Positions 56,297 to 63,954 are shown, counted from the first letter of the stretch. The stretch is DNA of 64,000 bases from IMGVR_UViG_3300025930_000007:1-64000; one strand, 5' to 3'. The notes: generated by a model from the letters alone, not told the origin. Numbers and translations: made by a program.

Positions 56297-56588
56297 CCGG
56301 ATGAAGTAAAAATTTTGGCCCGTCGGAGAAGTCTCCGACGGGCCGTGCTGAGAAGTCCTCAGTAGGAGCGATGGGGTACGCCCCCGTGCCTACCGAGAAG
56401 TGTGCTGCGTGGTTAAGACGCAGCGTTTTGACAATCGGGCTTGAATCTAAAGAGCGAAAGGCCGGGGGCACCGGCCGGGAAAGCTGGTGCCCCCGGACCT
56501 CATTCTATCTCTTCGTCCCAAAACTTCAAGCTGTCACTTGAGCGGGTGGCGGTTTGGCATTTGGCGCCCTGGGCTCAGGGCGCCTTTC

Positions 56589-56948
56589 GGGGCCGAAATA
56601 GTATCGACGGAGATCCAAGACAGGAAAGCTGCGTGTCGTGGACGCCGGTTGGCCACGTAAAACATCCGGTAAAAACCTAACTGGCAAGAGCCAGCTCGCT
56701 CGCGCGGCCTAGCCGTGTCGTCGCCCCTAGTGACGCCGATAGCCTGGGTGCGACGTTAATAATCGGTCGCTACCCGTAAGGTGATTCCTACCTTCCGGGG
56801 ATAAGAATAAGTGGAACGTGAAGCCCGCAAACCTGCTGGTGAGCGAGCGGAGCTTCGAGAGCCGCAAGGCAGAATCATCAGATACACACGTAGATGCCCC
56901 TAGACTGTGATCTTCGGACGGGGGTTGCAAAGCCCCCCGGCTCCACCA
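56589..56948 (+). ncRNA. ssrA: tmRNA with tag peptide (A)GKSQLARAA
   Basis: 5' GGGGCCGAAA..TCGAC and 3' CGGCTCCACCA with G3:U70; TAACT-GGC resume context, tag at 56683-56712. Confidence 0.9.
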
Positions 56949-56949
56949 T

Positions 56950-57023
56950 GCGGTCAAGATGTTACAGTAGCATGCCAGTTTTCCAAACTGGACGCGCGGG
57001 TGCGACTCCCGCTGACCGCACCA
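56950..57023 (+). tRNA. tRNA-Gly(TCC)
   Basis: Cloverleaf; CCAGT-TTTCCAA-ACTGG; CCA end. Confidence 0.9.
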
Positions 57024-57138
57024 ATATTTTTAGAAATAGAATGAGCGGCGCTTTTCGCCTACAATAAGAGGGTACGACCGGGGCTCTCCTCCAGAGGTTG
57101 GCGGAGATCGACATCTTGAAGAATGTCTTGGGGGCCCT

Positions 57139-57396
57139 GTGGTGGAGTTTCCGGAAGACAAGACACTTCAACCCGGATCCTGGTACCTCTGGCGCACCGG
57201 GAAGCAACGCATCTTCATTGCCTGCCCGCTCTGCAGCCAGGTCGTCTCGATCGATCCGGAGGAGATCGAGATTCTGGAGGACGGCAGATTGTCCAAGATC
57301 ATCGACTGTCCCAACATGATCTGCGATTTCACTGATGCAATACGGCTGCAGGGCTGGGGTGAACAGGGATCATCTTCCAGTCTTCCGAAAGTTTAG
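57139..57396 (+). CDS. Small Cys-rich hypothetical protein
   Basis: 'IACPLC..CPNMIC..IRLQGW'; start uncertain. Confidence 0.5.
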   Translation: MVEFPEDKTLQPGSWYLWRTGKQRIFIACPLCSQVVSIDPEEIEILEDGRLSKIIDCPNMICDFTDAIRLQGWGEQGSSSSLPKV

Positions 57397-57398
57397 AT

Positions 57399-57472
57399 CG
57401 GGGCGTGTTGTAGCGGCAGCAAGCGACGTTCCCAACGTTGAGGTGTGGGTTCGACTCCCATCGCCCCGTCCA
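57399..57472 (+). tRNA. tRNA-Gly(CCC)
   Basis: CGACG-TTCCCAA-CGTTG; GTTCGA; CCA. Confidence 0.9.
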
Positions 57473-57480
57473 ATTTTGCT

Positions 57481-57600
57481 GTGAATCAAGACCGTGGGTC
57501 ACCCAAGGGACGCTGCAAGGTGACATCTGGCCCGGCAGCCGTGGAGTCCTCCCGGCCGGGGAATAACTGAGGACCTAGGCGTCCCACTATCTTGATTCAC
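57481..57600 (+). ncRNA. Unidentified end-closed structured RNA
   Basis: GTGAATCAAGA..TCTTGATTCAC terminal stem between tRNAs. Confidence 0.5.
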
Positions 57601-57602
57601 AT

Positions 57603-57673
57603 AGGCCACGATCCAGCGATCAGCTTGGTCTCCAAAACCGAGCAGTGGGGGGCGGCACCCCGGTGGCCTGCCA
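57603..57673 (+). tRNA. tRNA-Trp(CCA), atypical D and T arms
   Basis: AGGCCAC/GTGGCCT acceptor; CTCCAAA loop; CCA. Confidence 0.7.
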
Positions 57674-57681
57674 GAATTCAT

Positions 57682-57755
57682 GGTCCCTGAGTATGTCGGC
57701 AGTACGCTACCTTGTCACGGTAGAAGGACGGGTTCGACTCCCGTAGGGATCGCCA
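57682..57755 (+). tRNA. tRNA-Asp(GTC)
   Basis: CTACC-TTGTCAC-GGTAG. Confidence 0.9.
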
Positions 57756-57763
57756 AAAGAAAA

Positions 57764-57840
57764 CCCCCGGAGGCCGAAGTCGTGGAGGCGCCGGCTTGTC
57801 ACGCCGGAGAAAGCGGGTGCGACTCCCGTCCGGGGGGCCA
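57764..57840 (+). tRNA. tRNA-Asp(GTC), second copy
   Basis: CCGGC-TTGTCAC-GCCGG. Confidence 0.85.
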
Positions 57841-57856
57841 ACCTTAGTCTCGATAC

Positions 57857-57931
57857 TCCCAGATCGTCTAACTGGTAGGACGACAGACTCTGAATCTGTA
57901 AATTGGGGTTCGAATCCCTATCTGGGAACCA
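57857..57931 (+). tRNA. tRNA-Gln(CTG)
   Basis: ACAGA-CTCTGAA-TCTGT. Confidence 0.9.
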
Positions 57932-57934
57932 GTC

Positions 57935-58249
57935 TTATGCGCCGAGATGCTTGGCGATCAGGGCCTCGAGCTGTTCCCTGGTCATCTCGCCTTCAGTCCG
58001 ATGGACCTCCTGGCCCTCCTTGAAGAAGACGAGTGCCGGCAGGCCGTCGATGTCGTAGCCGTTGGCCGACTTCTTGCACTGGTCGATCCGGGCGCCCACG
58101 ATCAGGACGGAATCGTTGTAATCGTTGGCAGCCTGCTCGATCACGGGCTTGAAGTCGACGCAATGGGTGCATTCGGGGTGCCAGAAGTCGACGATCGCGA
58201 GCGGCGCCCCCAGGACTTCGCTGAAGTTCTTGTCCGTCACGGAAAGCAT
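57935..58249 (-). CDS. Thioredoxin family protein
   Basis: 'IVDFWHPECTHC', 'IDGLPALVFFKEG..R..G'; AGGAG SD. Confidence 0.85.
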   Translation of the reverse strand: MLSVTDKNFSEVLGAPLAIVDFWHPECTHCVDFKPVIEQAANDYNDSVLIVGARIDQCKKSANGYDIDGLPALVFFKEGQEVHRTEGEMTREQLEALIAKHLGA

Positions 58250-58281
58250 TCGAATTCTCCTAATCTCCAAGCATTATACAA

Positions 58282-58356
58282 GCCGGTCTAGCTCAGCAGT
58301 AGAGCGCCCGTCTGAAAAGCGGGAGGTGGCGGGTGCGACACCCGCGGCCGGCACCA
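58282..58356 (+). tRNA. tRNA-Phe(GAA)
   Basis: CCCGT-CTGAAAA-GCGGG. Confidence 0.9.
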
Positions 58357-58363
58357 AATATTT

Positions 58364-58438
58364 GGGGGCATCGTCCAATTGGTAGGACACCAGCATGGCA
58401 TGCTGGGGATCGGGGTTCAAGTCCCCGTGCTTCCACCA
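58364..58438 (+). tRNA. tRNA-Ala(GGC)
   Basis: CCAGC-ATGGCAT-GCTGG; G3:U70. Confidence 0.9.
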
Positions 58439-58446
58439 GAAAACTT

Positions 58447-58522
58447 GCGCAGGAGAGGCACGGTGACCTCACCAGTCTCATAAGCTGGGGATAGCGGGTT
58501 CGACTCCCGCCTGTCGCTACCA
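58447..58522 (+). tRNA. tRNA with CAT anticodon (Met or Ile2), bulged acceptor stem
   Basis: CCAGT-CTCATAA-GCTGG; GTTCGA; CCA. Confidence 0.7.
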
Positions 58523-58538
58523 AGATTCCCTTATACGA

Positions 58539-58615
58539 CGCGGGGTGGAGTAGCCCGGTAACTCGCCAGGCTCATAACCTGGAAACCGCAGGTTCAAATC
58601 CTGCCCCCGCAACCA
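58539..58615 (+). tRNA. Initiator tRNA-fMet(CAT)
   Basis: CGCGGGG..CCCCGCAACCA with C1:A72 mismatch. Confidence 0.9.
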
Positions 58616-58622
58616 AAAATTC

Positions 58623-58748
58623 GGAGGCTGACTGACGAGGGTACTTCGCTGGTTCAATTCCAGCCTGCCCGACTAGGGCGCTCGGATCCCGAGCTCCCCA
58701 GCGGGCAGGCGCCCGATGCCTGGGCACCCCTTGTCTCCAATCGCCTCC
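58623..58748 (+). ncRNA. Y-RNA (YrlA)-like RNA 1
   Basis: GGAGGC/GCCTCC closing stem, GAGGGTACTTC, then T arm, acceptor-like stem and D-like arm. Confidence 0.6.
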
Positions 58749-58757
58749 AAAATCTTC

Positions 58758-58887
58758 AGGGGCTGCAGAGCGAGCTTACTTCACCAGACTCTTAATCTGG
58801 AGGACCTGGTTCGAGTCCAGGCTTCGGCCGAAAGGTCGATGTGGTGTATCGGTAGCACACTCAGTGGCTTGTTCGACAATTGCCCCT
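58758..58887 (+). ncRNA. Y-RNA-like RNA 2 containing a circularly permuted tRNA-Lys(CTT)-like module
   Basis: AGGGGC/GCCCCT stem, TTACTTC, anticodon arm, T arm, GAAA-capped acceptor stem, D arm. Confidence 0.65.
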
Positions 58888-58897
58888 ATAAAAATTC

Positions 58898-59082
58898 GCG
58901 GGCTGATGGATCGAGGTTACTTCGCCCTACAAAACCCCCGAAAAGGAAGGTCCGTCGAACCTTCCTCTACCGCGAAAGCGAACGGGTTGAGCGTGAGGTG
59001 CTTGTGGTAACACGCCGGCGCAAGCCGGAGAAGGAGGTTCGACTCCTCCCAAATCGACATGGCCTTGGCCGTAATTGCCCGC
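58898..59082 (+). ncRNA. Y-RNA-like RNA 3
   Basis: GCGGGC/GCCCGC stem, GAGGTTACTTC, D arm + GCAA-capped stem + T arm. Confidence 0.6.
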
Positions 59083-59091
59083 ATAATATTC

Positions 59092-59182
59092 GAGCGCTGA
59101 CTAGCGGCGTTACTTCGGAGCCTGGGCTCGAAGCCCGACACGGCGAAAGCCGTGGGCAAGTCGCTGCTTAATGATTGCGCTC
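59092..59182 (+). ncRNA. Y-RNA-like RNA 4 (short)
   Basis: GAGCGC/GCGCTC stem, GCGTTACTTC, two small hairpins. Confidence 0.55.
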
Positions 59183-59186
59183 ACAA

Positions 59187-59261
59187 GGGGCCATAGCTCA
59201 GCAGGGAGAGCGCCGGTTTCGCATACCGGAGACGCGAGTTCGATTCTCGCTGGTTCCACCA
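59187..59261 (+). tRNA. tRNA-Ala(CGC)
   Basis: CCGGT-TTCGCAT-ACCGG; G3:U70. Confidence 0.9.
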
Positions 59262-59282
59262 AAATTTAGCATCATCAGACCT

Positions 59283-59358
59283 GGGCCGGCATGTACCGTA
59301 GTGGCGACACTGCCTTGCAAGCAGCGTGTGGTGGGTGCGACTCCCATCCGGTCCACCA
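59283..59358 (+). tRNA. tRNA-Ala(TGC)
   Basis: CTGC-CTTGCAA-GCAG; G3:U70. Confidence 0.8.
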
Positions 59359-59365
59359 AATATTC

Positions 59366-59492
59366 GAGAGCTGCAGATTGAGGTTACTTCTCTACCACTT
59401 ACGAGACGTGGTGTAGCGGTCTGCACACCGGCCAAAAGCCGGAGGTGGTCGTCCGACTCGACCCGTTGTTGCCTTGATCATCAATTGCTCTC
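59366..59492 (+). ncRNA. Y-RNA-like RNA 5
   Basis: GAGAGC/GCTCTC stem, GAGGTTACTTC, D arm + anticodon-less stem + T-like arm. Confidence 0.6.
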
Positions 59493-59496
59493 AAAT

Positions 59497-59583
59497 GGGG
59501 TCGCTTGGAGAGAAGGATCTCCACCTGTCTGTAAAACAGGCGTCCGTTTGGACTAAGCGGCGCGATACCGCACGGCCCCACCA
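59497..59583 (+). tRNA. tRNA-Tyr(GTA)
   Basis: CCTGT-CTGTAAA-ACAGG; long variable arm. Confidence 0.8.
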
Positions 59584-59584
59584 C

Positions 59585-59660
59585 TGCCTCGTCTGTCTAA
59601 TTGGTAGGACGCCGGTCTTTGAAGCCGGAGATCTCGGTTCGAATCCGAGCGAGGCAACCA
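59585..59660 (+). tRNA. tRNA-Gln(TTG)
   Basis: CCGGT-CTTTGAA-GCCGG. Confidence 0.9.
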
Positions 59661-59673
59661 AAGCTCTCTAGAT

Positions 59674-59749
59674 GCGGCCGTGGTGTAGCTTGGTAGCACG
59701 AGAACTTGCCATGTTCTAAGCACGGGTTCAAATCCCGTCGGCCGCTCCA
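59674..59749 (+). tRNA. tRNA-Gly(GCC)
   Basis: AGAAC-TTGCCAT-GTTCT. Confidence 0.9.
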
Positions 59750-59760
59750 ATATTTCCCAT

Positions 59761-59834
59761 CGGCTCGTAGTTCAACAGCAGAACGTTCGCTTGATAAGCG
59801 AAAAACGCAGGTGCGACTCCTGCCGGGCCGACCA
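59761..59834 (+). tRNA. tRNA-Ile(GAT)
   Basis: TTCGC-TTGATAA-GCGAA. Confidence 0.85.
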
Positions 59835-59837
59835 TAC

Positions 59838-59913
59838 GGTGGCCGTGGTGTAATGGTTTGCACATCTGGTTGTGGCCCAGAGGGTGCGGGTTCGATCCCC
59901 GTCGGTCACCCCA
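59838..59913 (+). tRNA. tRNA-His(GTG)
   Basis: G-1, TCTGG-TTGTGGC-CCAGA, C73. Confidence 0.9.
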
Positions 59914-59936
59914 AAAAATAATGCTACAATGGCTGG

Positions 59937-60134
59937 GTGCCATATGTAGAACCGTCCTGGCGACAATGGCCTCAGTGGAGATGGCTCTCCCGGACTCTTT
60001 GCTTCTTCGGAAACCATCACTGGATGAGGAGCAAAAGCCTCCAGAATCTTCCGATCGCCTGCGCGGTCTGCTCGAAGAAGACGAAGCATTTCAATACGTA
60101 CATCAAGCTCGCCAAGAAACACGCCGGGCTGTAG
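59937..60134 (+). CDS. Small Cys/His hypothetical protein
   Basis: 'LCFFGNHHW..CAVC'; its stop overlaps the tRNA-Pro 5' end. Confidence 0.5.
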   Translation: MPYVEPSWRQWPQWRWLSRTLCFFGNHHWMRSKSLQNLPIACAVCSKKTKHFNTYIKLAKKHAGL

Positions 60135-60200
60135 GGTAGCGGCCAACCCGCCTGCTTCGGGAGCAGGAAATCGCGAGTTCGAATCTCGCCAGCCCGACCA
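60125..60200 (+). tRNA. tRNA-Pro(CGG)
   Basis: CCTGC-TTCGGGA-GCAGG. Confidence 0.9.
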
Positions 60201-60203
60201 TTC

Positions 60204-60280
60204 CAGGGACATGGGGAGATAGCGCCCCACCTGTTTCGGATACAGGCATAGGCCCGGTGCGAGTCCGGGGTCCCTGACCA
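60204..60280 (+). tRNA. tRNA-Pro(CGG), divergent
   Basis: CCTGT-TTCGGAT-ACAGG (A37). Confidence 0.75.
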
Positions 60281-60289
60281 AAAACTCAT

Positions 60290-60366
60290 CAGGCACAGGG
60301 TCAGATAGCGGGCCGCCTGCCTTGGAAGCAGGAGATAGACTGGTGCAAGTCCAGTGTGCCTGACCA
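60290..60366 (+). tRNA. tRNA-Pro(TGG), divergent
   Basis: CCTGC-CTTGGAA-GCAGG (A37). Confidence 0.75.
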
Positions 60367-60379
60367 ATCTTTTTAATCT

Positions 60380-60455
60380 CGGGCTCAAGGGAAGGTAGCG
60401 TCCCGCCTGTTTGGGGTACAGGAGCAGGCCGGTGCAAGTCCGGCGAGCCCGACCA
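60380..60455 (+). tRNA. tRNA-Pro(GGG)
   Basis: CCTGT-TTGGGGT-ACAGG. Confidence 0.8.
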
Positions 60456-60462
60456 AAATCAT

Positions 60463-60543
60463 CCGGAGGCAGGTCGGCTGACGGCTGGCTGGGTCGCTCC
60501 CAGCATGACAGCCGGTTGGGTTCGGTTCCCGAACTCCGGTCCA
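60463..60543 (+). ncRNA. tRNA-sized CCA-ending RNA without a normal cloverleaf
   Basis: CCGGAG/CTCCGG-T-CCA ends; one long internal hairpin. Confidence 0.4.
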
Positions 60544-60617
60544 CGGCGCGTATTTCAATAGCAGAATATCTGCGTGACATGCAGAAGATGGGGGTGCGAT
60601 TCCCTCCGCGCCGACCA
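60544..60617 (+). tRNA. tRNA-Val(GAC)
   Basis: TCTGC-GTGACAT-GCAGA. Confidence 0.85.
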
Positions 60618-60640
60618 ATCTTGTTTGCTATGATTTCGCC

Positions 60641-60838
60641 ATGGGACCCAACAAAGACGAAATCCTTCGGAACGCCAAGAAGATGGCCGAGGAAGAAAAG
60701 AAGCGACGTGCCAGCATAGCGACGGAGAAGCCCCTTGGGAGAATGCAGTCCAGGATGCCGATCGGCTGCTGGATGTGGATCCTGGCCGCGGCCGCGCTGA
60801 TCATCTGGCTCATCAAAAAGTACGGACCTGGGATATAA
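60641..60838 (+). CDS. Small membrane protein
   Basis: Charged N-terminus plus TM 'WMWILAAAALIIWLI'. Confidence 0.6.
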   Translation: MGPNKDEILRNAKKMAEEEKKRRASIATEKPLGRMQSRMPIGCWMWILAAAALIIWLIKKYGPGI

Positions 60839-60947
60839 TCCTTGCGACGGCTGAGATGGACCCCTAACTCTGGTGGCGGGGTTTCGGGTCGCGCGTCGTG
60901 AGGGTGTGTGCCTTCACGGAGGGTGTTTCGGGGCCCCGCTCCCATTT

Positions 60948-61023
60948 GCCGGCGTAGTTTAGCAGCTCTGAATGCCAGTTCGGTAAACTGGAGGTGTGGG
61001 GGCAGCACCCACCGCCGGCTCCA
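60948..61023 (+). tRNA. tRNA-Thr(GGT), atypical (C33, non-canonical T loop)
   Basis: CCAGT-TCGGTAA-ACTGG. Confidence 0.75.
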
Positions 61024-61194
61024 GAAATAAAAAACCACGGCGACAGGCCGTGGCATTTGAGGGATCGGCGAATCCCGAAATTGGGATTCGTGCGAACAAG
61101 ATACGGGAAACAATAGCGAGGTGTCCAGAAAAGAAAAAGCCCGGGGAACACCCCCGGGCCTCGAGCGGGATTCGGTGCTTGCAGTGTACCACAT

Positions 61195-61269
61195 GCTGGC
61201 ATAGCTCAATAGTAGAGCACCTGTTTTGTAAACAGGCGGTTGCCGGTGCAAGTCCGGCTGCCAGCTCCA
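61195..61269 (+). tRNA. tRNA-Thr(TGT)
   Basis: CCTGT-TTTGTAA-ACAGG. Confidence 0.9.
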
Positions 61270-61281
61270 AATATTCATCAC

Positions 61282-61355
61282 GCCGGCCTAGTTCAACAGT
61301 AGAATGCTCGCTTCATAAGTGAGAGATCCCAGGGCAGCTCTGGGGGCCGGTACCA
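61282..61355 (+). tRNA. tRNA with CAT anticodon (Met or Ile2)
   Basis: CTCGC-TTCATAA-GTGAG. Confidence 0.75.
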
Positions 61356-61387
61356 TTTCATCTACCCAAAGGAAGGATAGGAACACC

Positions 61388-61564
61388 GTGAAGTACATCG
61401 TGGAGGCCCGCGCCGGCGACCGCTGGGTGACGCTGGGCCAGCCGTACATCCTCAAGGAAAAGGCCATGGCGGCCGAGGAAGCGGCTCTGGAAAGCACGCT
61501 CTGGGAAGACGCCAGGATCCTGGTCGTGAACGATCGGCAGCAGATCGTCAAGATCATCGACTGA
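61388..61564 (+). CDS. Small hypothetical protein
   Basis: GTG at 61388 after AGGA. Confidence 0.6.
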   Translation: MKYIVEARAGDRWVTLGQPYILKEKAMAAEEAALESTLWEDARILVVNDRQQIVKIID

Positions 61565-61568
61565 CCTC

Positions 61569-61660
61569 GGAGGGGTTGGTACATAGGCAGGTCCGCTCGT
61601 TTCGAAAACGAGTAGGTCTCGAAAGGGGCCTTGCCGGTTCGACTCCGGTCCCCTCCTCCA
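61569..61660 (+). tRNA. tRNA-Ser(CGA)
   Basis: CTCGT-TTCGAAA-ACGAG; long variable arm. Confidence 0.85.
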
Positions 61661-61721
61661 GAATTCTCGATTGATGCAGCGCCTCGAGGCCGGTATACTT
61701 TCCTTATTGGGGGGTATCAAG

Positions 61722-61973
61722 ATGATCGGTTACCAGGCTCCTGCATATCGTCCGGCGCAGCGGTCTCAAATGGGCGCGATCTCGTCCATGACCGGCACGG
61801 ACTGGTTGCTGCTGCTCGGCGGCGCCGTGGTCGGCGGCGCAGGCATCAATGGGCTCCGGAATCAGTTCACGGGCCCGGAGAAGGCCAATGCGATCGGCGT
61901 GCTCGTCGACCTGGTCCTGACGGGCGTCGGCCTCACGCTCTTCATCCAGAAGGGCTCACAGGCGATCGCGTAA
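61722..61973 (+). CDS. MGA-leader two-TM protein inside the tRNA island
   Basis: MIGYQAPAYRPAQRSQMGA; own promoter TTGATG-17-TATACT at 61671-61699. Confidence 0.75.
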   Translation: MIGYQAPAYRPAQRSQMGAISSMTGTDWLLLLGGAVVGGAGINGLRNQFTGPEKANAIGVLVDLVLTGVGLTLFIQKGSQAIA

Positions 61974-62093
61974 GGCGGCGAGAATCCATCTGCTCATGCG
62001 ACGGAGATTCTCTAAAAAGAAACACCCAGGGCTCTTCGAAGGAAGAGTCCCGGGTGCGAGAGAGGGAAACCTTTCGGTACTGTAATTATACCC

Positions 62094-62184
62094 GGAGATG
62101 AAGGCAGTGGGCATGCCACCACGTCTTGAAAACGTTGGACCCGGGAAACCGGGGCGGTGGGTTCGAGTCCCCCCGTCTCCGCCA
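62094..62184 (+). tRNA. tRNA-Ser(TGA)
   Basis: ACGT-CTTGAAA-ACGT; long variable arm; G73. Confidence 0.8.
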
Positions 62185-62195
62185 AAAATCAGTGC

Positions 62196-62322
62196 AGATC
62201 GATCCGCCGTTGCTCACTGGCAGCACGAGGAATGCGCGAAGCTGGCGTGTGAATCGTGAAGGGCGTGACGGCTTCCGGAGCCTTGGGGTGCAAACACATC
62301 CTCAGCGGCGGGTCAATCTCCA
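62196..62322 (+). ncRNA. Unidentified end-closed structured RNA
   Basis: AGATCGATCCGCCGTTG..CAGCGGCGGGTCAATCT long terminal stem. Confidence 0.45.
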
Positions 62323-62325
62323 TTT

Positions 62326-62416
62326 GGAGGGGTTGGGCATTGGCAGGCCCACCTCGTTGGAAACGAGACAGCCGGCGCAAGCCGGCTTGCAGGTTCGACC
62401 CCTGTCCCCTCCGCCA
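62326..62416 (+). tRNA. tRNA-Ser(GGA)
   Basis: CTCG-TTGGAAA-CGAG; long variable arm. Confidence 0.85.
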
Positions 62417-62419
62417 GAA

Positions 62420-62905
62420 TTACTTGAAGATCGCGTAGAGGATCCCGGCGACCGCAACGGCGCCGATCGCATAAGGCGCGATCTCCTTCGCCGTGGGAGC
62501 GGCTGGCGTCGGTTCCTGAGCGACCAGAACGGTCGTCCGGGGCTGAGGATAGGCCGTCACGGGGAAGAGGTAGGGATACGGATAATAGACATTCCAGGGG
62601 TTCGGCCCAGGCGGGCACGGACCATTTCTCTTCTCGAAGGTGATCACGCCGTCCGTGTTGCACTCGAACATCTGGTAGCAGATGCTGTTCTCCACGAAAG
62701 GCTTCCCAACCGGCTTGCAGGTCTTTACGGGAGGAGGAGGCGGCGGCGGGGGCGGCGGCTCCGGTTCCGGAGCAGGTTCTGGTTCAGGAGCTGGAGGTGG
62801 CTCGGGCATCGGGGCCGGCTCAAGTGGCGCTTCATCGACGCCGAGCCGGAAAGGTGTCCCGAACAGGTATCCGGTTCTACGAAGTGAGACCAGACGCATG
62901 ACCAT
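62420..62905 (-). CDS. LG-leader Pro-rich membrane protein
   Basis: AAGGAGG SD; 'PFRLGV', poly-Pro, Cys module, C-terminal TM. Confidence 0.75.
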   Translation of the reverse strand: MVMRLVSLRRTGYLFGTPFRLGVDEAPLEPAPMPEPPPAPEPEPAPEPEPPPPPPPPPPVKTCKPVGKPFVENSICYQMFECNTDGVITFEKRNGPCPPGPNPWNVYYPYPYLFPVTAYPQPRTTVLVAQEPTPAAPTAKEIAPYAIGAVAVAGILYAIFK

Positions 62906-62982
62906 CCTCCTTTTACCGCGGTGCCGGGGGGGATGGCGACCTTGGTCTTCTTTGAGTATACTGAAACCAGGAAGGAAATAAA

Positions 62983-63714
62983 GTGAGAATTGCGATCATC
63001 TCGGATACCCATCTGAGGCACCGGAAATATCCGATCGATGTTCCTGAATGTGATCTGCTGATCCACTGCGGCGATGCCATGATCGAGGGTACGGCCGCTG
63101 AGGTCAGGATGTTCGCGTCCTGGTTCGAAGCTCTCAAAGCAAAATATAAGGTCTTCGTCGCGGGAAATCACGACTGGCTTTTCGAGAAAGACAATGCCCT
63201 GGCAAGAAGCCTTCTCCCCAAGGGCGTCATCTATCTCCAAGACAGCCAGATCGAGATCGAGGGCCTCAAGATCTACGGAAGTCCCTGGCAGCCGGAGTTC
63301 TGCGAATGGGCTTTCAACCTGAAGCGGGGCTGGCCTCTCCGGAAGAAGTGGGAGCTGATCCCGGCCGGAATCGACATCCTGATCACGCATGGACCGCCGC
63401 TCGGGATCCTGGATTTCAGCAAGTTCGGAGACGAGCATGTCGGCTGCGCGGATCTCCGGCAGGAACTTCAGCGGATCAAGCCGAAGGTGCATTGCTTCGG
63501 CCACATCCACGGAGATTATGGGACGGCCACCTGGGCAAATACGCTCTTCGTGAACGCCTCTCTCTGCGACGAGGCATACGTCGCGAATCATCCTCCGATC
63601 CTGATCGAGATGGAAGCCGGCAAGGCTCCCGTGCTTCTGAAGGCGCCTGGTCTCCCGCCTCCCACGAAGGGAGCCGTTCCCATCAGGGCAACTGGAAAAG
63701 CTCTCTGGACCTAG
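62983..63714 (+). CDS. Calcineurin-like metallophosphoesterase
   Basis: SDTH, HCGD, GNHD, THGPP and FGHIH motifs. Confidence 0.92.
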   Translation: MRIAIISDTHLRHRKYPIDVPECDLLIHCGDAMIEGTAAEVRMFASWFEALKAKYKVFVAGNHDWLFEKDNALARSLLPKGVIYLQDSQIEIEGLKIYGSPWQPEFCEWAFNLKRGWPLRKKWELIPAGIDILITHGPPLGILDFSKFGDEHVGCADLRQELQRIKPKVHCFGHIHGDYGTATWANTLFVNASLCDEAYVANHPPILIEMEAGKAPVLLKAPGLPPPTKGAVPIRATGKALWT

Positions 63715-63715
63715 A

Positions 63716-63853
63716 GAGAGTTCTTCCCAGGCGAATCCAGTGTTGAAGCTCGACGTCCGTCTAGCTAGCGCACGTCGAGGGGAAACAACGCGAATGCCGG
63801 CCGCGATGGCCGGACTGCATGCGCGCGGCTGGGTTCTCCTCGAAAGAACTCTC
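63716..63853 (+). ncRNA. Unidentified end-closed structured RNA
   Basis: GAGAGTTCTT..AAGAACTCTC terminal stem. Confidence 0.45.
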
Positions 63854-63857
63854 AACT

Positions 63858-63954
63858 GGAAGCGACGCGGATAGCAGGTGGCCGCAACGATTTGCTAAAT
63901 CGTCCACCCGGCACAAACCGGGTGTTGCCGGGGCAGCACCGGCCGCTTCCGCCA
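63858..63954 (+). tRNA. tRNA-Ser(GCT)
   Basis: ACGAT-TTGCTAA-ATCGT; long variable arm; G73 CCA. Confidence 0.8.

What the first reader, a model, noticed from the sequence alone, without database searches (positions are those of the whole stretch)
56950..63954. Half of the tRNAs have a rewired elbow: G55 in the T loop co-occurring with A18 in the D loop
Seen: about 15 of 29 tRNAs have T loops such as TGCGACT, TGCAAGT or GGCAGCA instead of TTCRA. Most of these also have AG in place of the D-loop GG (Gly-TCC, Phe, Ala-TGC, Ile, three Pro, Val, both Thr, CAT at 61282). tRNAs with TTCRA keep GG. Known: G18:psi55 is a near-universal tertiary pair. Inference: a compensated alternative elbow rather than decay, possibly avoiding host modification enzymes or tRNA-targeting defences.
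Basis: partly seen in the sequence, partly recalled or inferred. Interest (0 to 1): 0.6.

Follow-up and report, generated by a model that had tools for sequence, protein, structure and literature searches.

The report
Alternative A18-G55 elbow in tRNAs
Half of this soil phage's tRNA genes replace the near-universal G18-U55 contact that holds the tRNA elbow together with a co-varying A18-G55 pair, and the same swap turns up in hundreds of other phage and bacterial tRNAs, including essential single-copy ones, so it is a working alternative design rather than decay.

Summary
The window holds 30 tRNA(-like) genes after a tmRNA. Fifteen have G at T-loop position 55. Among unambiguous D loops, 11 are A18G19 with G55, 12 are G18G19 with T55, and none is mixed (p=7e-7). 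Over the whole 266-kb phage the split is 21/22/0 (p=1e-12). Infernal's tRNA model puts the A under G18 and the G under U55.

Exact-pattern scans of IMG/VR gave at least 118 A18+G55 loci, against 6 each for the two mixed states. In 370 fetched loci, the unique tRNAs outside the seed pattern split 536 : 10 : 17 : 1202.

The class covers all 20 amino acids. Some bacterial arrays use it in every ARAGORN-called tRNA. It also occurs in housekeeping tRNAs: the only Thr-UGU found in a Planctomycete assembly, and the only Trp, Tyr and Cys found in a Saccharibacteria assembly.

UGCRA plus a donated adenosine matches the T-loop type known from FMN and cobalamin riboswitches. The best reading is functional tRNAs with a compensated alternative elbow. 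The defence-evasion idea is untested and is weakened by the housekeeping cases. I found no published description.

The parts
56589..56948 (+). tmRNA. Its tRNA-like part shares the change: AG where the family consensus has GG, and an 8-nt T loop UUGCAAAG.
   Evidence: Rfam RF00023, 116 bits; alignment
56950..57023 (+). tRNA-Gly(TCC), variant elbow: D loop TACAGTA, T loop TGCGACT, encoded CCA
57399..57472 (+). tRNA-Gly(CCC), canonical: AGCGGCA / TTCGACT
57603..57673 (+). Trp(CCA)-like gene with a truncated D arm and T loop GGCGGCA. Position 18 cannot be assigned.
57682..57755 (+). tRNA-Asp(GTC), canonical: GTCGGCA / TTCGACT
57764..57840 (+). Second Asp(GTC) gene. T loop TGCGACT, but the D loop contains GG, so it is an exception to the rule.
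   Evidence: Rfam 46.2 bits
57857..57931 (+). tRNA-Gln(CTG), canonical
58282..58356 (+). tRNA-Phe(GAA), variant: AGCAGTA / TGCGACA
58364..58438 (+). tRNA-Ala(GGC), canonical
58447..58521 (+). CAT-anticodon tRNA, canonical T loop, no clean CCA end
58539..58615 (+). CAT-anticodon tRNA with a 1-72 mismatch (initiator-like), canonical
59187..59261 (+). tRNA-Ala(CGC), canonical: AGCAGGGA / TTCGATT
59283..59358 (+). tRNA-Ala(TGC) with G3:T70, T loop TGCGACT and an irregular D arm containing TAGTG. Scored AG by rule, but the numbering is uncertain.
59497..59583 (+). tRNA-Tyr(GTA) with a long variable arm, T loop CGCGATA (C54 G55) and D loop AGAAGGAT (GG). An exception to the rule.
59585..59660 (+). 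tRNA-Gln(TTG), canonical
59674..59749 (+). tRNA-Gly(GCC), canonical
59761..59834 (+). tRNA-Ile(GAT), variant: AACAGCA / TGCGACT
59839..59913 (+). tRNA-His(GTG), canonical
60125..60200 (+). tRNA-Pro(CGG), canonical: AGCGGCCA / TTCGAAT
60204..60280 (+). tRNA-Pro(CGG), variant: AGATAGCG / TGCGAGT
60290..60366 (+). tRNA-Pro(TGG), variant: AGATAGCG / TGCAAGT
60380..60455 (+). tRNA-Pro(GGG), variant: AGGTAGCG / TGCAAGT
60463..60543 (+). Odd tRNA-like gene: CGC anticodon call, 11-nt variable region, T loop TTCGGTT, no GG in the D loop
60544..60617 (+). tRNA-Val(GAC), variant: AATAGCA / TGCGATT
60948..61023 (+). tRNA-Thr(GGT), variant with AG in the D loop and T loop GGCAGCA (G54 G55 C56 A57 G58)
   Evidence: Rfam 42.2 bits
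61195..61269 (+). tRNA-Thr(TGT), variant: AATAGTA / TGCAAGT. It is 94% identical to the housekeeping Thr-UGU of Planctomycete assemblies.
61282..61355 (+). CAT-anticodon tRNA, variant: AACAGTA / GGCAGCT
61569..61660 (+). tRNA-Ser(CGA), canonical
62094..62184 (+). tRNA-Ser(TGA), canonical
62326..62416 (+). tRNA-Ser(GGA), canonical
63858..63954 (+). tRNA-Ser(GCT) with a long variable arm, T loop GGCAGCA and an 11-nt D loop that holds both AG and GG (ambiguous)

Best explanation
These are working tRNA genes that build the elbow with a different tertiary contact, one that is known from other RNAs.

In ordinary tRNA the T loop is U54-U55-C56-R57-A58. G18 of the D loop slides between R57 and A58 and bonds to (pseudo)uridine 55. 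G19 pairs with C56.

In the variant class the T loop is U54-G55-C56-R57-A58, and the D loop offers A18 in place of G18. G19:C56, U54-A58 and everything else in the cloverleaf stay as they are.

UGNRA with a donated, intercalating adenosine that faces the G at loop position 2 is the T-loop type of FMN and cobalamin riboswitches. So the double change moves the elbow from the 'tRNA type' of T loop to the 'riboswitch type'. Either single change alone would mismatch the two partners, which explains why the mixed states are almost absent. A smaller sub-class (GGCRG) also replaces U54-A58 with G54...G58, as in an rRNA T loop of sequence GGAAG.

Shown here:
- the covariation;
- intact cloverleaves with encoded CCA;
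- coverage of all 20 amino acids;
- use of this elbow in housekeeping tRNAs that are the only copy found for their anticodon.

Inferred:
- the hydrogen-bond geometry;
- normal processing, charging and decoding;
- absence of pseudouridine 55 and Gm18.

Why the class is so enriched in phage and mobile tRNA arrays is not explained.
For: Within the phage. Clear cases split 11 AG/G55, 12 GG/T55 and 0 mixed in the window. Genome-wide the split is 21, 22 and 0. Numbering was checked against Infernal RF00005.

Across IMG/VR, with the same 7-nt D-loop context:
- A18+T55: 6 loci;
- G18+G55: 6 loci.

In the 370 fetched loci, unique tRNAs outside the seed pattern split 536 AG/G55, 10 AG/T55, 17 GG/G55 and 1202 GG/T55. 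Many of the 17 are 'AGG' D loops that also fit A18 G19. The class spans 51 anticodons. Its consensus is A14 A15 Y16 A18 G19 Y20 A21 in the D loop and T54 G55 C56 R57 A58 N T60 in the T loop.

Repeated double switches. Near-identical array tRNAs in Myxococcales differ at 18 and 55 together. Leu-GAG in L138 versus L169 differs in the D loop only at position 18. Leu-CAG in L199 versus L137 differs at one stem position.

Function in cells.
- In a 5.6-Mb Planctomycetales assembly, all roughly 40 dispersed tRNAs are canonical except the only Thr(TGT) found, which is A18/G55.
- That gene heads the Thr-Tyr-Gly-Thr-tuf-Trp operon. EF-Tu was confirmed there in a second assembly.
- In a Saccharibacteria assembly, the only Trp, Tyr, Cys and Thr-GGT genes found are A18/G55.
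- Several bacterial arrays had G55 in every tRNA that ARAGORN called, for example 21 of 21 in Geminisphaera colitermitum TAV2.

Structural precedent. FMN/Cbl T loops are UGNRA (YGNRA), whereas tRNA T loops have U at position 2. The intercalating nucleotide is adenosine in 99.96% of cases, and the donated adenosine faces the position-2 nucleotide. An rRNA T loop GGAAG also exists (bioRxiv 10.1101/2022.12.26.521914).
Against: - No structure, charging or expression data exist for any A18/G55 tRNA. The one metatranscriptome that holds the phage has exact contigs only over the tmRNA and near Ser-CGA, and DNA carry-over cannot be excluded.
- In the window, Asp-GTC no. 2 and Tyr have G55 with a GG-containing D loop. 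Three more G55 genes cannot be numbered safely.
- 'Only copy found' rests on metagenome-assembled genomes that may be incomplete.
- The loci were fetched with patterns that select for these tRNAs. Seed tRNAs were removed, but neighbours within an array are related, so the pooled p-value overstates independence.
- Trees built on 52 stem positions are too weak to count switches.
Confidence: 0.8

Rival explanations
1. Adaptive evasion. The A18-G55 elbow is selected in phage and mobile arrays because it makes these tRNAs invisible or resistant to host factors that read G18 or U55. Such factors could be TruB, TrmH, quality control, or toxins that cut the T loop. Alternatively, it lets a phage factor tell its own tRNAs from the host's.
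For: - G55 and A18 cannot receive pseudouridine 55 or Gm18 (chemistry).
- The class is about 2% of tRNAs in phage loci seeded by a canonical tRNA (13 of about 614). It is about 50% in this phage, and every called tRNA in some mobile arrays.
- A toxin that cuts between T54 and pseudouridine 55 (Burkholderia CdiA-CT E479) is known, from my memory of the literature.
- The tmRNA of the phage carries the same change.
Against: - Half of the phage's tRNAs are canonical, and the two classes mostly cover different anticodons.
- The same elbow occurs in housekeeping tRNAs of bacteria, including the probable host phylum.
- No TruB or CCA-adding enzyme gene was found in the phage, and no nuclease was linked to the trait.
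- Phages with a related phosphoesterase gene carry almost wholly canonical arrays.
Confidence: 0.2
2. Neutral bistability with founder effects. Both elbows work equally well. Arrays grow by duplication and anticodon change from a few founder genes, so an array's proportion of A18-G55 genes only reflects its ancestry.
For: - Within the phage, Arg-TCT (68235) and Leu-CAA (70526) share the same acceptor and T arms. Arg-CCT and Arg-TCG are near-duplicates.
- Arrays range from none to all variant.
- The outer G19:C56 face, which RNase P, the ribosome and T-boxes use, is unchanged.
Against: - On trees of the masked stems, the variant label is scattered almost at random within isotypes.
- Close pairs differ in state, so state is not simply inherited.
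- This account does not explain why the trait is rare in core genomes: 3 of 201 genomes of one phylum.
Confidence: 0.35
3. Decay or artefact. The variant genes are pseudogenes or non-translational tRNA-like RNAs, or the A is really position 17 and one G of the GG pair has been lost.
For: - A few members of the window's array are clearly irregular: Trp-like 57603, 60463, and 58447 without CCA.
- Y-RNA-like tRNA mimics lie among the tRNAs.
Against: - The 7-nt D loops align column for column with canonical ones: 99% A and 99% G at columns 4 and 5, against 100% G and 98% G.
- C56 is kept, as expected if G19 is kept.
- Stems are intact, Ala keeps G3:T70 and CCA is encoded.
- Rfam scores are 42-69 bits.
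- The elbow occurs in housekeeping tRNAs that are the only copy found.
Confidence: 0.03

Closest known systems
Canonical tRNA elbow (G18-pseudouridine 55, G19-C56, T54-A58), as reviewed in PMC4810234 and PMC7912444
   Same: Same cloverleaf, same 7-nt T loop and same loop lengths. G19:C56 and T54-A58 are kept. A purine at 18 is available to stack between 57 and 58.
   Different: The 18-55 partners are A and G instead of G and U. Pseudouridine 55 and Gm18 cannot be made. Neither review mentions such tRNAs.
UGNRA-type T loop with a donated adenosine, in FMN and cobalamin riboswitches (bioRxiv 10.1101/2022.12.26.521914)
   Same: Pentamer U-G-N-R-A inside a 7-nt loop. An adenosine intercalates between loop positions 4 and 5 and faces the G at position 2. 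Loop position 3 is free for a long-range pair.
   Different: There the partner is a T-loop receptor within a riboswitch. Here it is the tRNA D loop, with a Watson-Crick G19:C56. The geometry in tRNA is inferred, not observed.
Non-proteinogenic tRNA-Gly of Staphylococcus (PMC4574755)
   Same: Natural bacterial tRNAs that lack U55.
   Different: According to that paper they also lack G18, G19 and C56. They are limited to Gly-UCC and serve cell-wall synthesis. Here G19:C56 is kept and all 20 amino acids are covered.
Yeast mitochondrial tRNA-Asp with G55 (bioRxiv 10.1101/2025.05.09.653160)
   Same: A functional tRNA with G55 that therefore lacks pseudouridine 55.
   Different: A single organellar case. 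No covariation with position 18 is reported in the passage I read.
tRNA array units / L-arrays of mobile elements and phages (PMC4758250, PMC8421152)
   Same: Dense arrays of 20 or more tRNA genes with encoded CCA, on phages, plasmids and islands. This window is one of them.
   Different: My term searches in those two papers found no mention of the elbow. The Anabaena 7120 trn operon has only 1 G55 gene among 24.

Membership tests
tRNA (Rfam RF00005) | Cloverleaf scoring above the family's gathering score | tested here: met
   Variant genes score 42-69 bits against a threshold of 29.
tRNA (Rfam RF00005) | 7-bp acceptor stem, 5-bp T stem, 7-nt T loop, 7-nt anticodon loop | tested here: met
   Cloverleaf parse of 53 genes.
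tRNA (Rfam RF00005) | Tertiary pair G18-U55 | tested here: not met
   A18 and G55 in 11 window genes and 21 genome-wide.
tRNA (Rfam RF00005) | Tertiary pair G19-C56 | tested here: met
   G19 is 99% and C56 is 98% in the variant class.
tRNA (Rfam RF00005) | Aminoacylation and use in translation | not testable with these tools
   Indirect evidence only: housekeeping genes that are the only copy found for their anticodon carry this elbow.
UGNRA-type T loop (FMN/Cbl riboswitch type) | Pentamer Y-G-N-R-A as the first five of seven loop nucleotides | tested here: met
   T54 91%, G55 100%, R57 99%, A58 95%.
UGNRA-type T loop (FMN/Cbl riboswitch type) | Adenosine donated by the partner loop | tested here: met
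   A stands at the D-loop position that intercalates in tRNA, in 99% of 7-nt D loops.
UGNRA-type T loop (FMN/Cbl riboswitch type) | Observed intercalation between loop positions 4 and 5, and contact with the G at position 2 | not testable with these tools
   Needs a structure or chemical probing.
Staphylococcal non-proteinogenic tRNA-Gly | Loss of G18, G19, U55 and C56; Gly-UCC only | tested here: not met
   G19 and C56 are retained, and 51 anticodons are represented.
tRNA array unit (at least 20 tRNA genes, at least 2 per kb; PMC4758250) | Gene number and density | tested here: met
   30 genes in 7.0 kb of the window; 53 genes in 27 kb of the phage.
tRNA pseudogenes | Broken stems and unconstrained drift at conserved positions | tested here: not met
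   Stems are intact and the two positions change together.

The most novel reading that the evidence does not exclude
The A18-G55 elbow marks a horizontally circulating pool of tRNAs and tmRNAs that is selected because it is independent of, or resistant to, host factors that read the canonical G18-pseudouridine 55 elbow. Such factors could be TruB or TrmH-linked quality control, or toxins and defence nucleases that cut the T loop. Phages and stress-induced arrays would use this pool to keep translation running when canonical tRNAs are attacked.
Probability: 0.2. Interest if true: 0.85.

Novelty: new variant of a known kind. Interest (0 to 1): 0.7.

Why it matters
G18-pseudouridine 55 is treated as one of the invariant contacts of tRNA. 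Pseudouridine 55 and Gm18 are among its most conserved modifications. A second, naturally widespread solution has several consequences.
- **Constraint.** It shows that the elbow is held by pairing logic rather than by the identity of the bases.
- **Shared motif.** It links tRNA to the riboswitch class of T loops.
- **Predictions.** Whole sets of natural tRNAs should lack pseudouridine 55 and Gm18.
- **Experimental pairs.** It supplies natural matched pairs for testing what TruB, TrmH, RNase P, EF-Tu and the ribosome really need from the elbow.
- **Annotation.** ARAGORN's default run missed 9 of the 30 tRNA(-like) genes here, including all four with GGCRG loops, so phage tRNA counts are probably too low.
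- **Engineering.** The variant is a possible handle for orthogonal tRNAs.
- **Biology of arrays.** Its strong enrichment in phage and mobile arrays remains an open question.

Tried and rejected
- **Expression.** One search for sequencing runs and one read-laying run. The phage DNA is in at least 12 soil and rhizosphere studies. The single RNA run has exact contigs only at 56603-56786 (tmRNA) and 61596-61859. This says nothing about the variant tRNAs.
- **Related phages.** Loci found through the phosphoesterase gene inside the array (47-54% identity) have almost wholly canonical arrays. They gave no orthologous comparison.
- **BLAST of the phage tRNAs against all fetched loci.** Apart from one canonical CAT gene at 88%, only Thr-TGT has close relatives, namely Planctomycete core genes.
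- **Anabaena 7120 trn operon.** I hoped it would supply published charging data for a variant tRNA. Only 1 of 24 genes has G55.
- **Phylum-wide pattern scan.** 3 of 201 genomes match, all Thr-TGT. The trait is not phylum-wide.
- **Counting independent switches on trees.** The 52 aligned positions gave unresolved trees. Parsimony counts were close to those of shuffled labels.
- **Phage-encoded TruB or CCA-adding enzyme.** None found.
- **Survey of tmRNAs in other loci.** My script read only truncated output. I dropped this step.
- **Literature.** Nine searches found no description of A18-G55 tRNAs. Subscription journals and older tRNA compilations are outside the library.
- **The count of structure pairs.** Not used, because A-G is not one of its standard pairs.

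Full report
**What the window is.** The window is the first 64 kb of a 266,490-bp IMG/VR virus record, which CheckV estimates as 92% complete. A tmRNA lies at 56589-56948 (Rfam, 116 bits). A + strand array of tRNA genes follows it. The array runs to the end of the window and continues to about 84 kb of the record. Small ORFs lie between the tRNAs. Among them are a thioredoxin (57935-58270, minus strand) and a metallophosphoesterase (62983-63714). The phage DNA occurs in at least 12 independent soil and rhizosphere studies.

**Checking the observation.** ARAGORN's default run finds 21 tRNAs in the region and Rfam finds 19 at gathering score. Each misses some variant genes. I therefore built a cloverleaf parse anchored on the encoded CCA, a 7-bp acceptor stem and a 5-bp T stem. 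It yields 30 tRNA(-like) genes in the window and 53 in the phage.

- Fifteen of the 30 have G at position 55.
  - T loops TGCRAnn: Gly-TCC, Asp-GTC no. 2, Phe, Ala-TGC, Ile, three Pro, Val-GAC, Thr-TGT.
  - T loop CGCGATA: Tyr.
  - T loops GGCRGCW: Trp-like, Thr-GGT, CAT at 61282, Ser-GCT.
- Eleven of these have AG at the D-loop place where the others have GG.
- Infernal's alignment to RF00005 places the A under G18 and the G under U55 with high posterior probability. The numbering objection therefore fails.
- Among unambiguous D loops the table is 11 AG/G55, 12 GG/T55 and 0 mixed (p=7.4e-7). With every ambiguous case scored against the hypothesis, p is 0.009. Genome-wide it is 21, 22 and 0 (p=9.5e-13).
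- Exceptions in the window are Asp-GTC no. 2 and Tyr, which have G55 with a GG-containing D loop by eye. Trp-like, Ser-GCT and, less clearly, Ala-TGC cannot be numbered safely.
- The tmRNA shares the change. It has AG where the family consensus has GG in the D-loop analogue, and a T loop UUGCAAAG.

**Is it more than a peculiarity of one genome?** I scanned IMG/VR with four exact patterns that differ only at positions 18 and 55. All four use the same 7-nt D-loop context.

| State | Loci |
|---|---|
| A18 + T55 | 6 |
| G18 + G55 | 6 |

The A18+G55 pattern also hit at least 120 stretches in bacterial and archaeal genome assemblies.

ARAGORN run on the 370 fetched loci gave 2,266 unique tRNAs. After removing all tRNAs that match the seed patterns, the split was 536 AG/G55, 10 AG/T55, 17 GG/G55 and 1,202 GG/T55, an odds ratio of about 3,800. 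Many of the 17 are 'AGG' D loops that fit A18 G19 G20 equally well.

The variant class covers 51 anticodons and all 20 amino acids. Its D-loop consensus is A14 A15 Y16 A18 G19 Y20 A21. Its T-loop consensus is T54 G55 C56 R57 A58 N T60. Position 57 is A in 48% of the class, against 22% in canonical tRNAs.

In loci that were seeded by a canonical tRNA, only about 2% of the other tRNAs are of this class. It is therefore a minority type that concentrates in arrays.

**Where it occurs in cells.** Most bacterial hits are tRNA arrays.

- In several arrays every tRNA that ARAGORN called has G55. Examples are Lacunisphaera (21 of 21 and 18 of 18), Geminisphaera colitermitum TAV2 (21 of 21), and a Planctomycetota contig (25 of 26).
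- Other hits are housekeeping genes. In six Planctomycete assemblies and one Aggregatilineales assembly, the first gene of the conserved Thr-Tyr-Gly-Thr operon is an A18/G55 Thr(TGT), while its neighbours are canonical (two further Planctomycete genomes). In one assembly I confirmed EF-Tu between Thr-GGT and Trp.
- I fetched 68 of the 69 Rfam tRNA hits of one 5.6-Mb Planctomycetales assembly, and ARAGORN called 69 tRNAs in them. About 40 dispersed genes are canonical. The only Thr(TGT) found is A18/G55. Two arrays mix both types.
- In a Saccharibacteria assembly with 39 tRNAs, the only Trp, Tyr, Cys and Thr-GGT genes found, plus one CAT gene, are A18/G55.
- These cases make it very likely that such tRNAs are processed, charged and used. 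The caveat is that metagenome assemblies can be incomplete.
- The trait is rare across the phylum: 3 of 201 sampled genomes match, all with Thr-TGT.

The window's Thr-TGT is 94% identical to the Planctomycete core gene, and the differences sit in paired stem positions. That points to Planctomycetota as the host.

**Independent switches.** Trees built on the 52 stem and anticodon-arm positions scatter the variant label almost at random within isotypes. These trees are weak. Near-identical pairs that differ in state are more telling. Myxococcales Leu-GAG genes (L138 versus L169) differ in the D loop only at position 18 and in the T loop at 55 and 57. Leu-CAG genes (L199 versus L137) differ at one stem position, yet both 18 and 55 have changed. 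The double change has therefore happened repeatedly.

**How it most likely works.** In tRNA, residue 18 intercalates between 57 and 58 and bonds to residue 55, and G19 pairs with C56 (PMC4810234). A study of T loops reports the following (bioRxiv 10.1101/2022.12.26.521914).

- FMN and cobalamin riboswitch T loops are UGNRA (YGNRA), whereas tRNA T loops have U at position 2.
- The nucleotide that intercalates between loop positions 4 and 5 is adenosine in 99.96% of FMN riboswitches.
- The donated adenosine faces the position-2 nucleotide.
- A distinct rRNA T loop of sequence GGAAG exists.

The variant tRNAs are the tRNA counterpart of the UGNRA-plus-adenosine type. The GGCRG sub-class resembles the rRNA type. 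That sub-class is common in Verrucomicrobial and phage arrays, always with A18 G19, and ARAGORN misses it. Positions 54 and 58 also co-vary in the pooled set (T-A, A-T, G-G).

The outer G19:C56 face is unchanged, so the general machinery that docks on it should still fit. That last point is inference from established knowledge. The hydrogen-bond geometry, and the absence of pseudouridine 55 and Gm18, are also inferred.

Avoidance of host modification enzymes or of tRNA-targeting defences remains possible, but three results weaken it.

- Half of the phage's tRNAs are canonical.
- Housekeeping tRNAs of bacteria, including the likely host clade, use the same elbow.
- The phage encodes no TruB or CCA-adding enzyme, and phages with a related gene in their arrays have canonical tRNAs.

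The strong enrichment in mobile arrays is real and unexplained. Founder effects within duplicating arrays are the simplest alternative. Arg-TCT and Leu-CAA of this phage share acceptor and T arms.

**Novelty.**

- Nine full-text searches found no paper describing A18-G55 tRNAs.
- Two reviews of the elbow and T loop do not mention them.
- My term searches in the main tRNA-array papers found no mention of the elbow.
- Isolated G55 cases are known: yeast mitochondrial tRNA-Asp, and staphylococcal cell-wall tRNA-Gly, which also lacks G18, G19 and C56.
- Older compilations outside the library may list single instances.

I rate this a new variant of a known kind.

Noticed in passing
window about 58616-58760, 58893-59085, 59088-59186, 59363-59495; G000 65464-66303: Four repeated elements lie between the tRNAs. 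Each has a conserved 5' motif (TTCG-nGnGC-TGA...GAGGTTACTTCG), a complementary 3' end and an internal tRNA-like module. One gives a weak Rfam hit to YrlA, the Y RNA-like family (30 bits, threshold 69). The phage encodes a TROVE/Ro60 protein just past the window (74 bits). Together they look like a phage Ro60-Y RNA module embedded in the tRNA array.
   Followed up: partly
window 56589-56948: The phage tmRNA has AG in place of the consensus GG in its D-loop analogue, and an 8-nt T loop UUGCAAAG. The elbow change is therefore not limited to tRNAs.
   Followed up: partly
window 57603-57673, 60948-61023, 61282-61355, 63858-63954; many loci: A third T-loop type, GGCRGNN (G54 G55 C56 R57 G58), occurs, nearly always with A18 G19. 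It is common in Verrucomicrobial and phage arrays, and ARAGORN's default run does not call these genes. It resembles an rRNA T loop of sequence GGAAG.
   Followed up: partly
pooled loci; G000 80885-80960: Positions 54 and 58 also co-vary. T-A occurs 2,149 times (T55 and G55 classes together), the swapped A-T 45 times, and G-G a few times. The phage CAT gene at 80885 has GTCGGCA (G54 T55 G58) with a GG D loop. The 54-58 change is therefore separable from the 18-55 change.
   Followed up: no
window 61195-61269 versus L156, L154, L149, L141: The phage Thr-TGT is 92-94% identical to the housekeeping Thr-UGU of Planctomycete assemblies. It is the only phage tRNA with close relatives among the fetched loci, apart from one canonical CAT gene at 88%. 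This suggests a Planctomycetota host and gene exchange in one direction or the other.
   Followed up: partly
L159, L160, L161, L202, L176: In some bacterial tRNA arrays of 18-26 genes, every or nearly every tRNA that ARAGORN called has the A18-G55 elbow. They occur in Lacunisphaera, Geminisphaera colitermitum TAV2 and a Planctomycetota contig.
   Followed up: no
L132, L148, L155, L181, L194, L201, L208, L209, L212, L249: Many Nostoc assemblies carry a conserved tRNA-like gene with a CTA (amber-reading) anticodon, an A18-G55 elbow and a weak acceptor stem.
   Followed up: no
G000 68235-68311 and 70526-70611; 82838-82911 and 83906-83979: Arg-TCT and Leu-CAA share identical acceptor and T arms. 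Arg-CCT and Arg-TCG are near-duplicates. These are signs of duplication with a change of anticodon or identity inside the array.
   Followed up: no
window 57603-57673, 58447-58521, 58762-58829, 60463-60543: Several irregular tRNA-like genes. They are a Trp-like gene with a truncated D arm, a CAT gene without a CCA end, a short Lys-CTT-like gene (Rfam 30.5 bits), and a gene with an 11-nt variable region and T loop TTCGGTT.
   Followed up: no
window 56500-62499 (run X18): A soil run holds a relative at 90-95% identity whose array differs by whole-gene gains and losses. For example, it skips 59583-59658 (Gln-TTG) and 58614-58890 (the first Y-RNA-like element).
   Followed up: no
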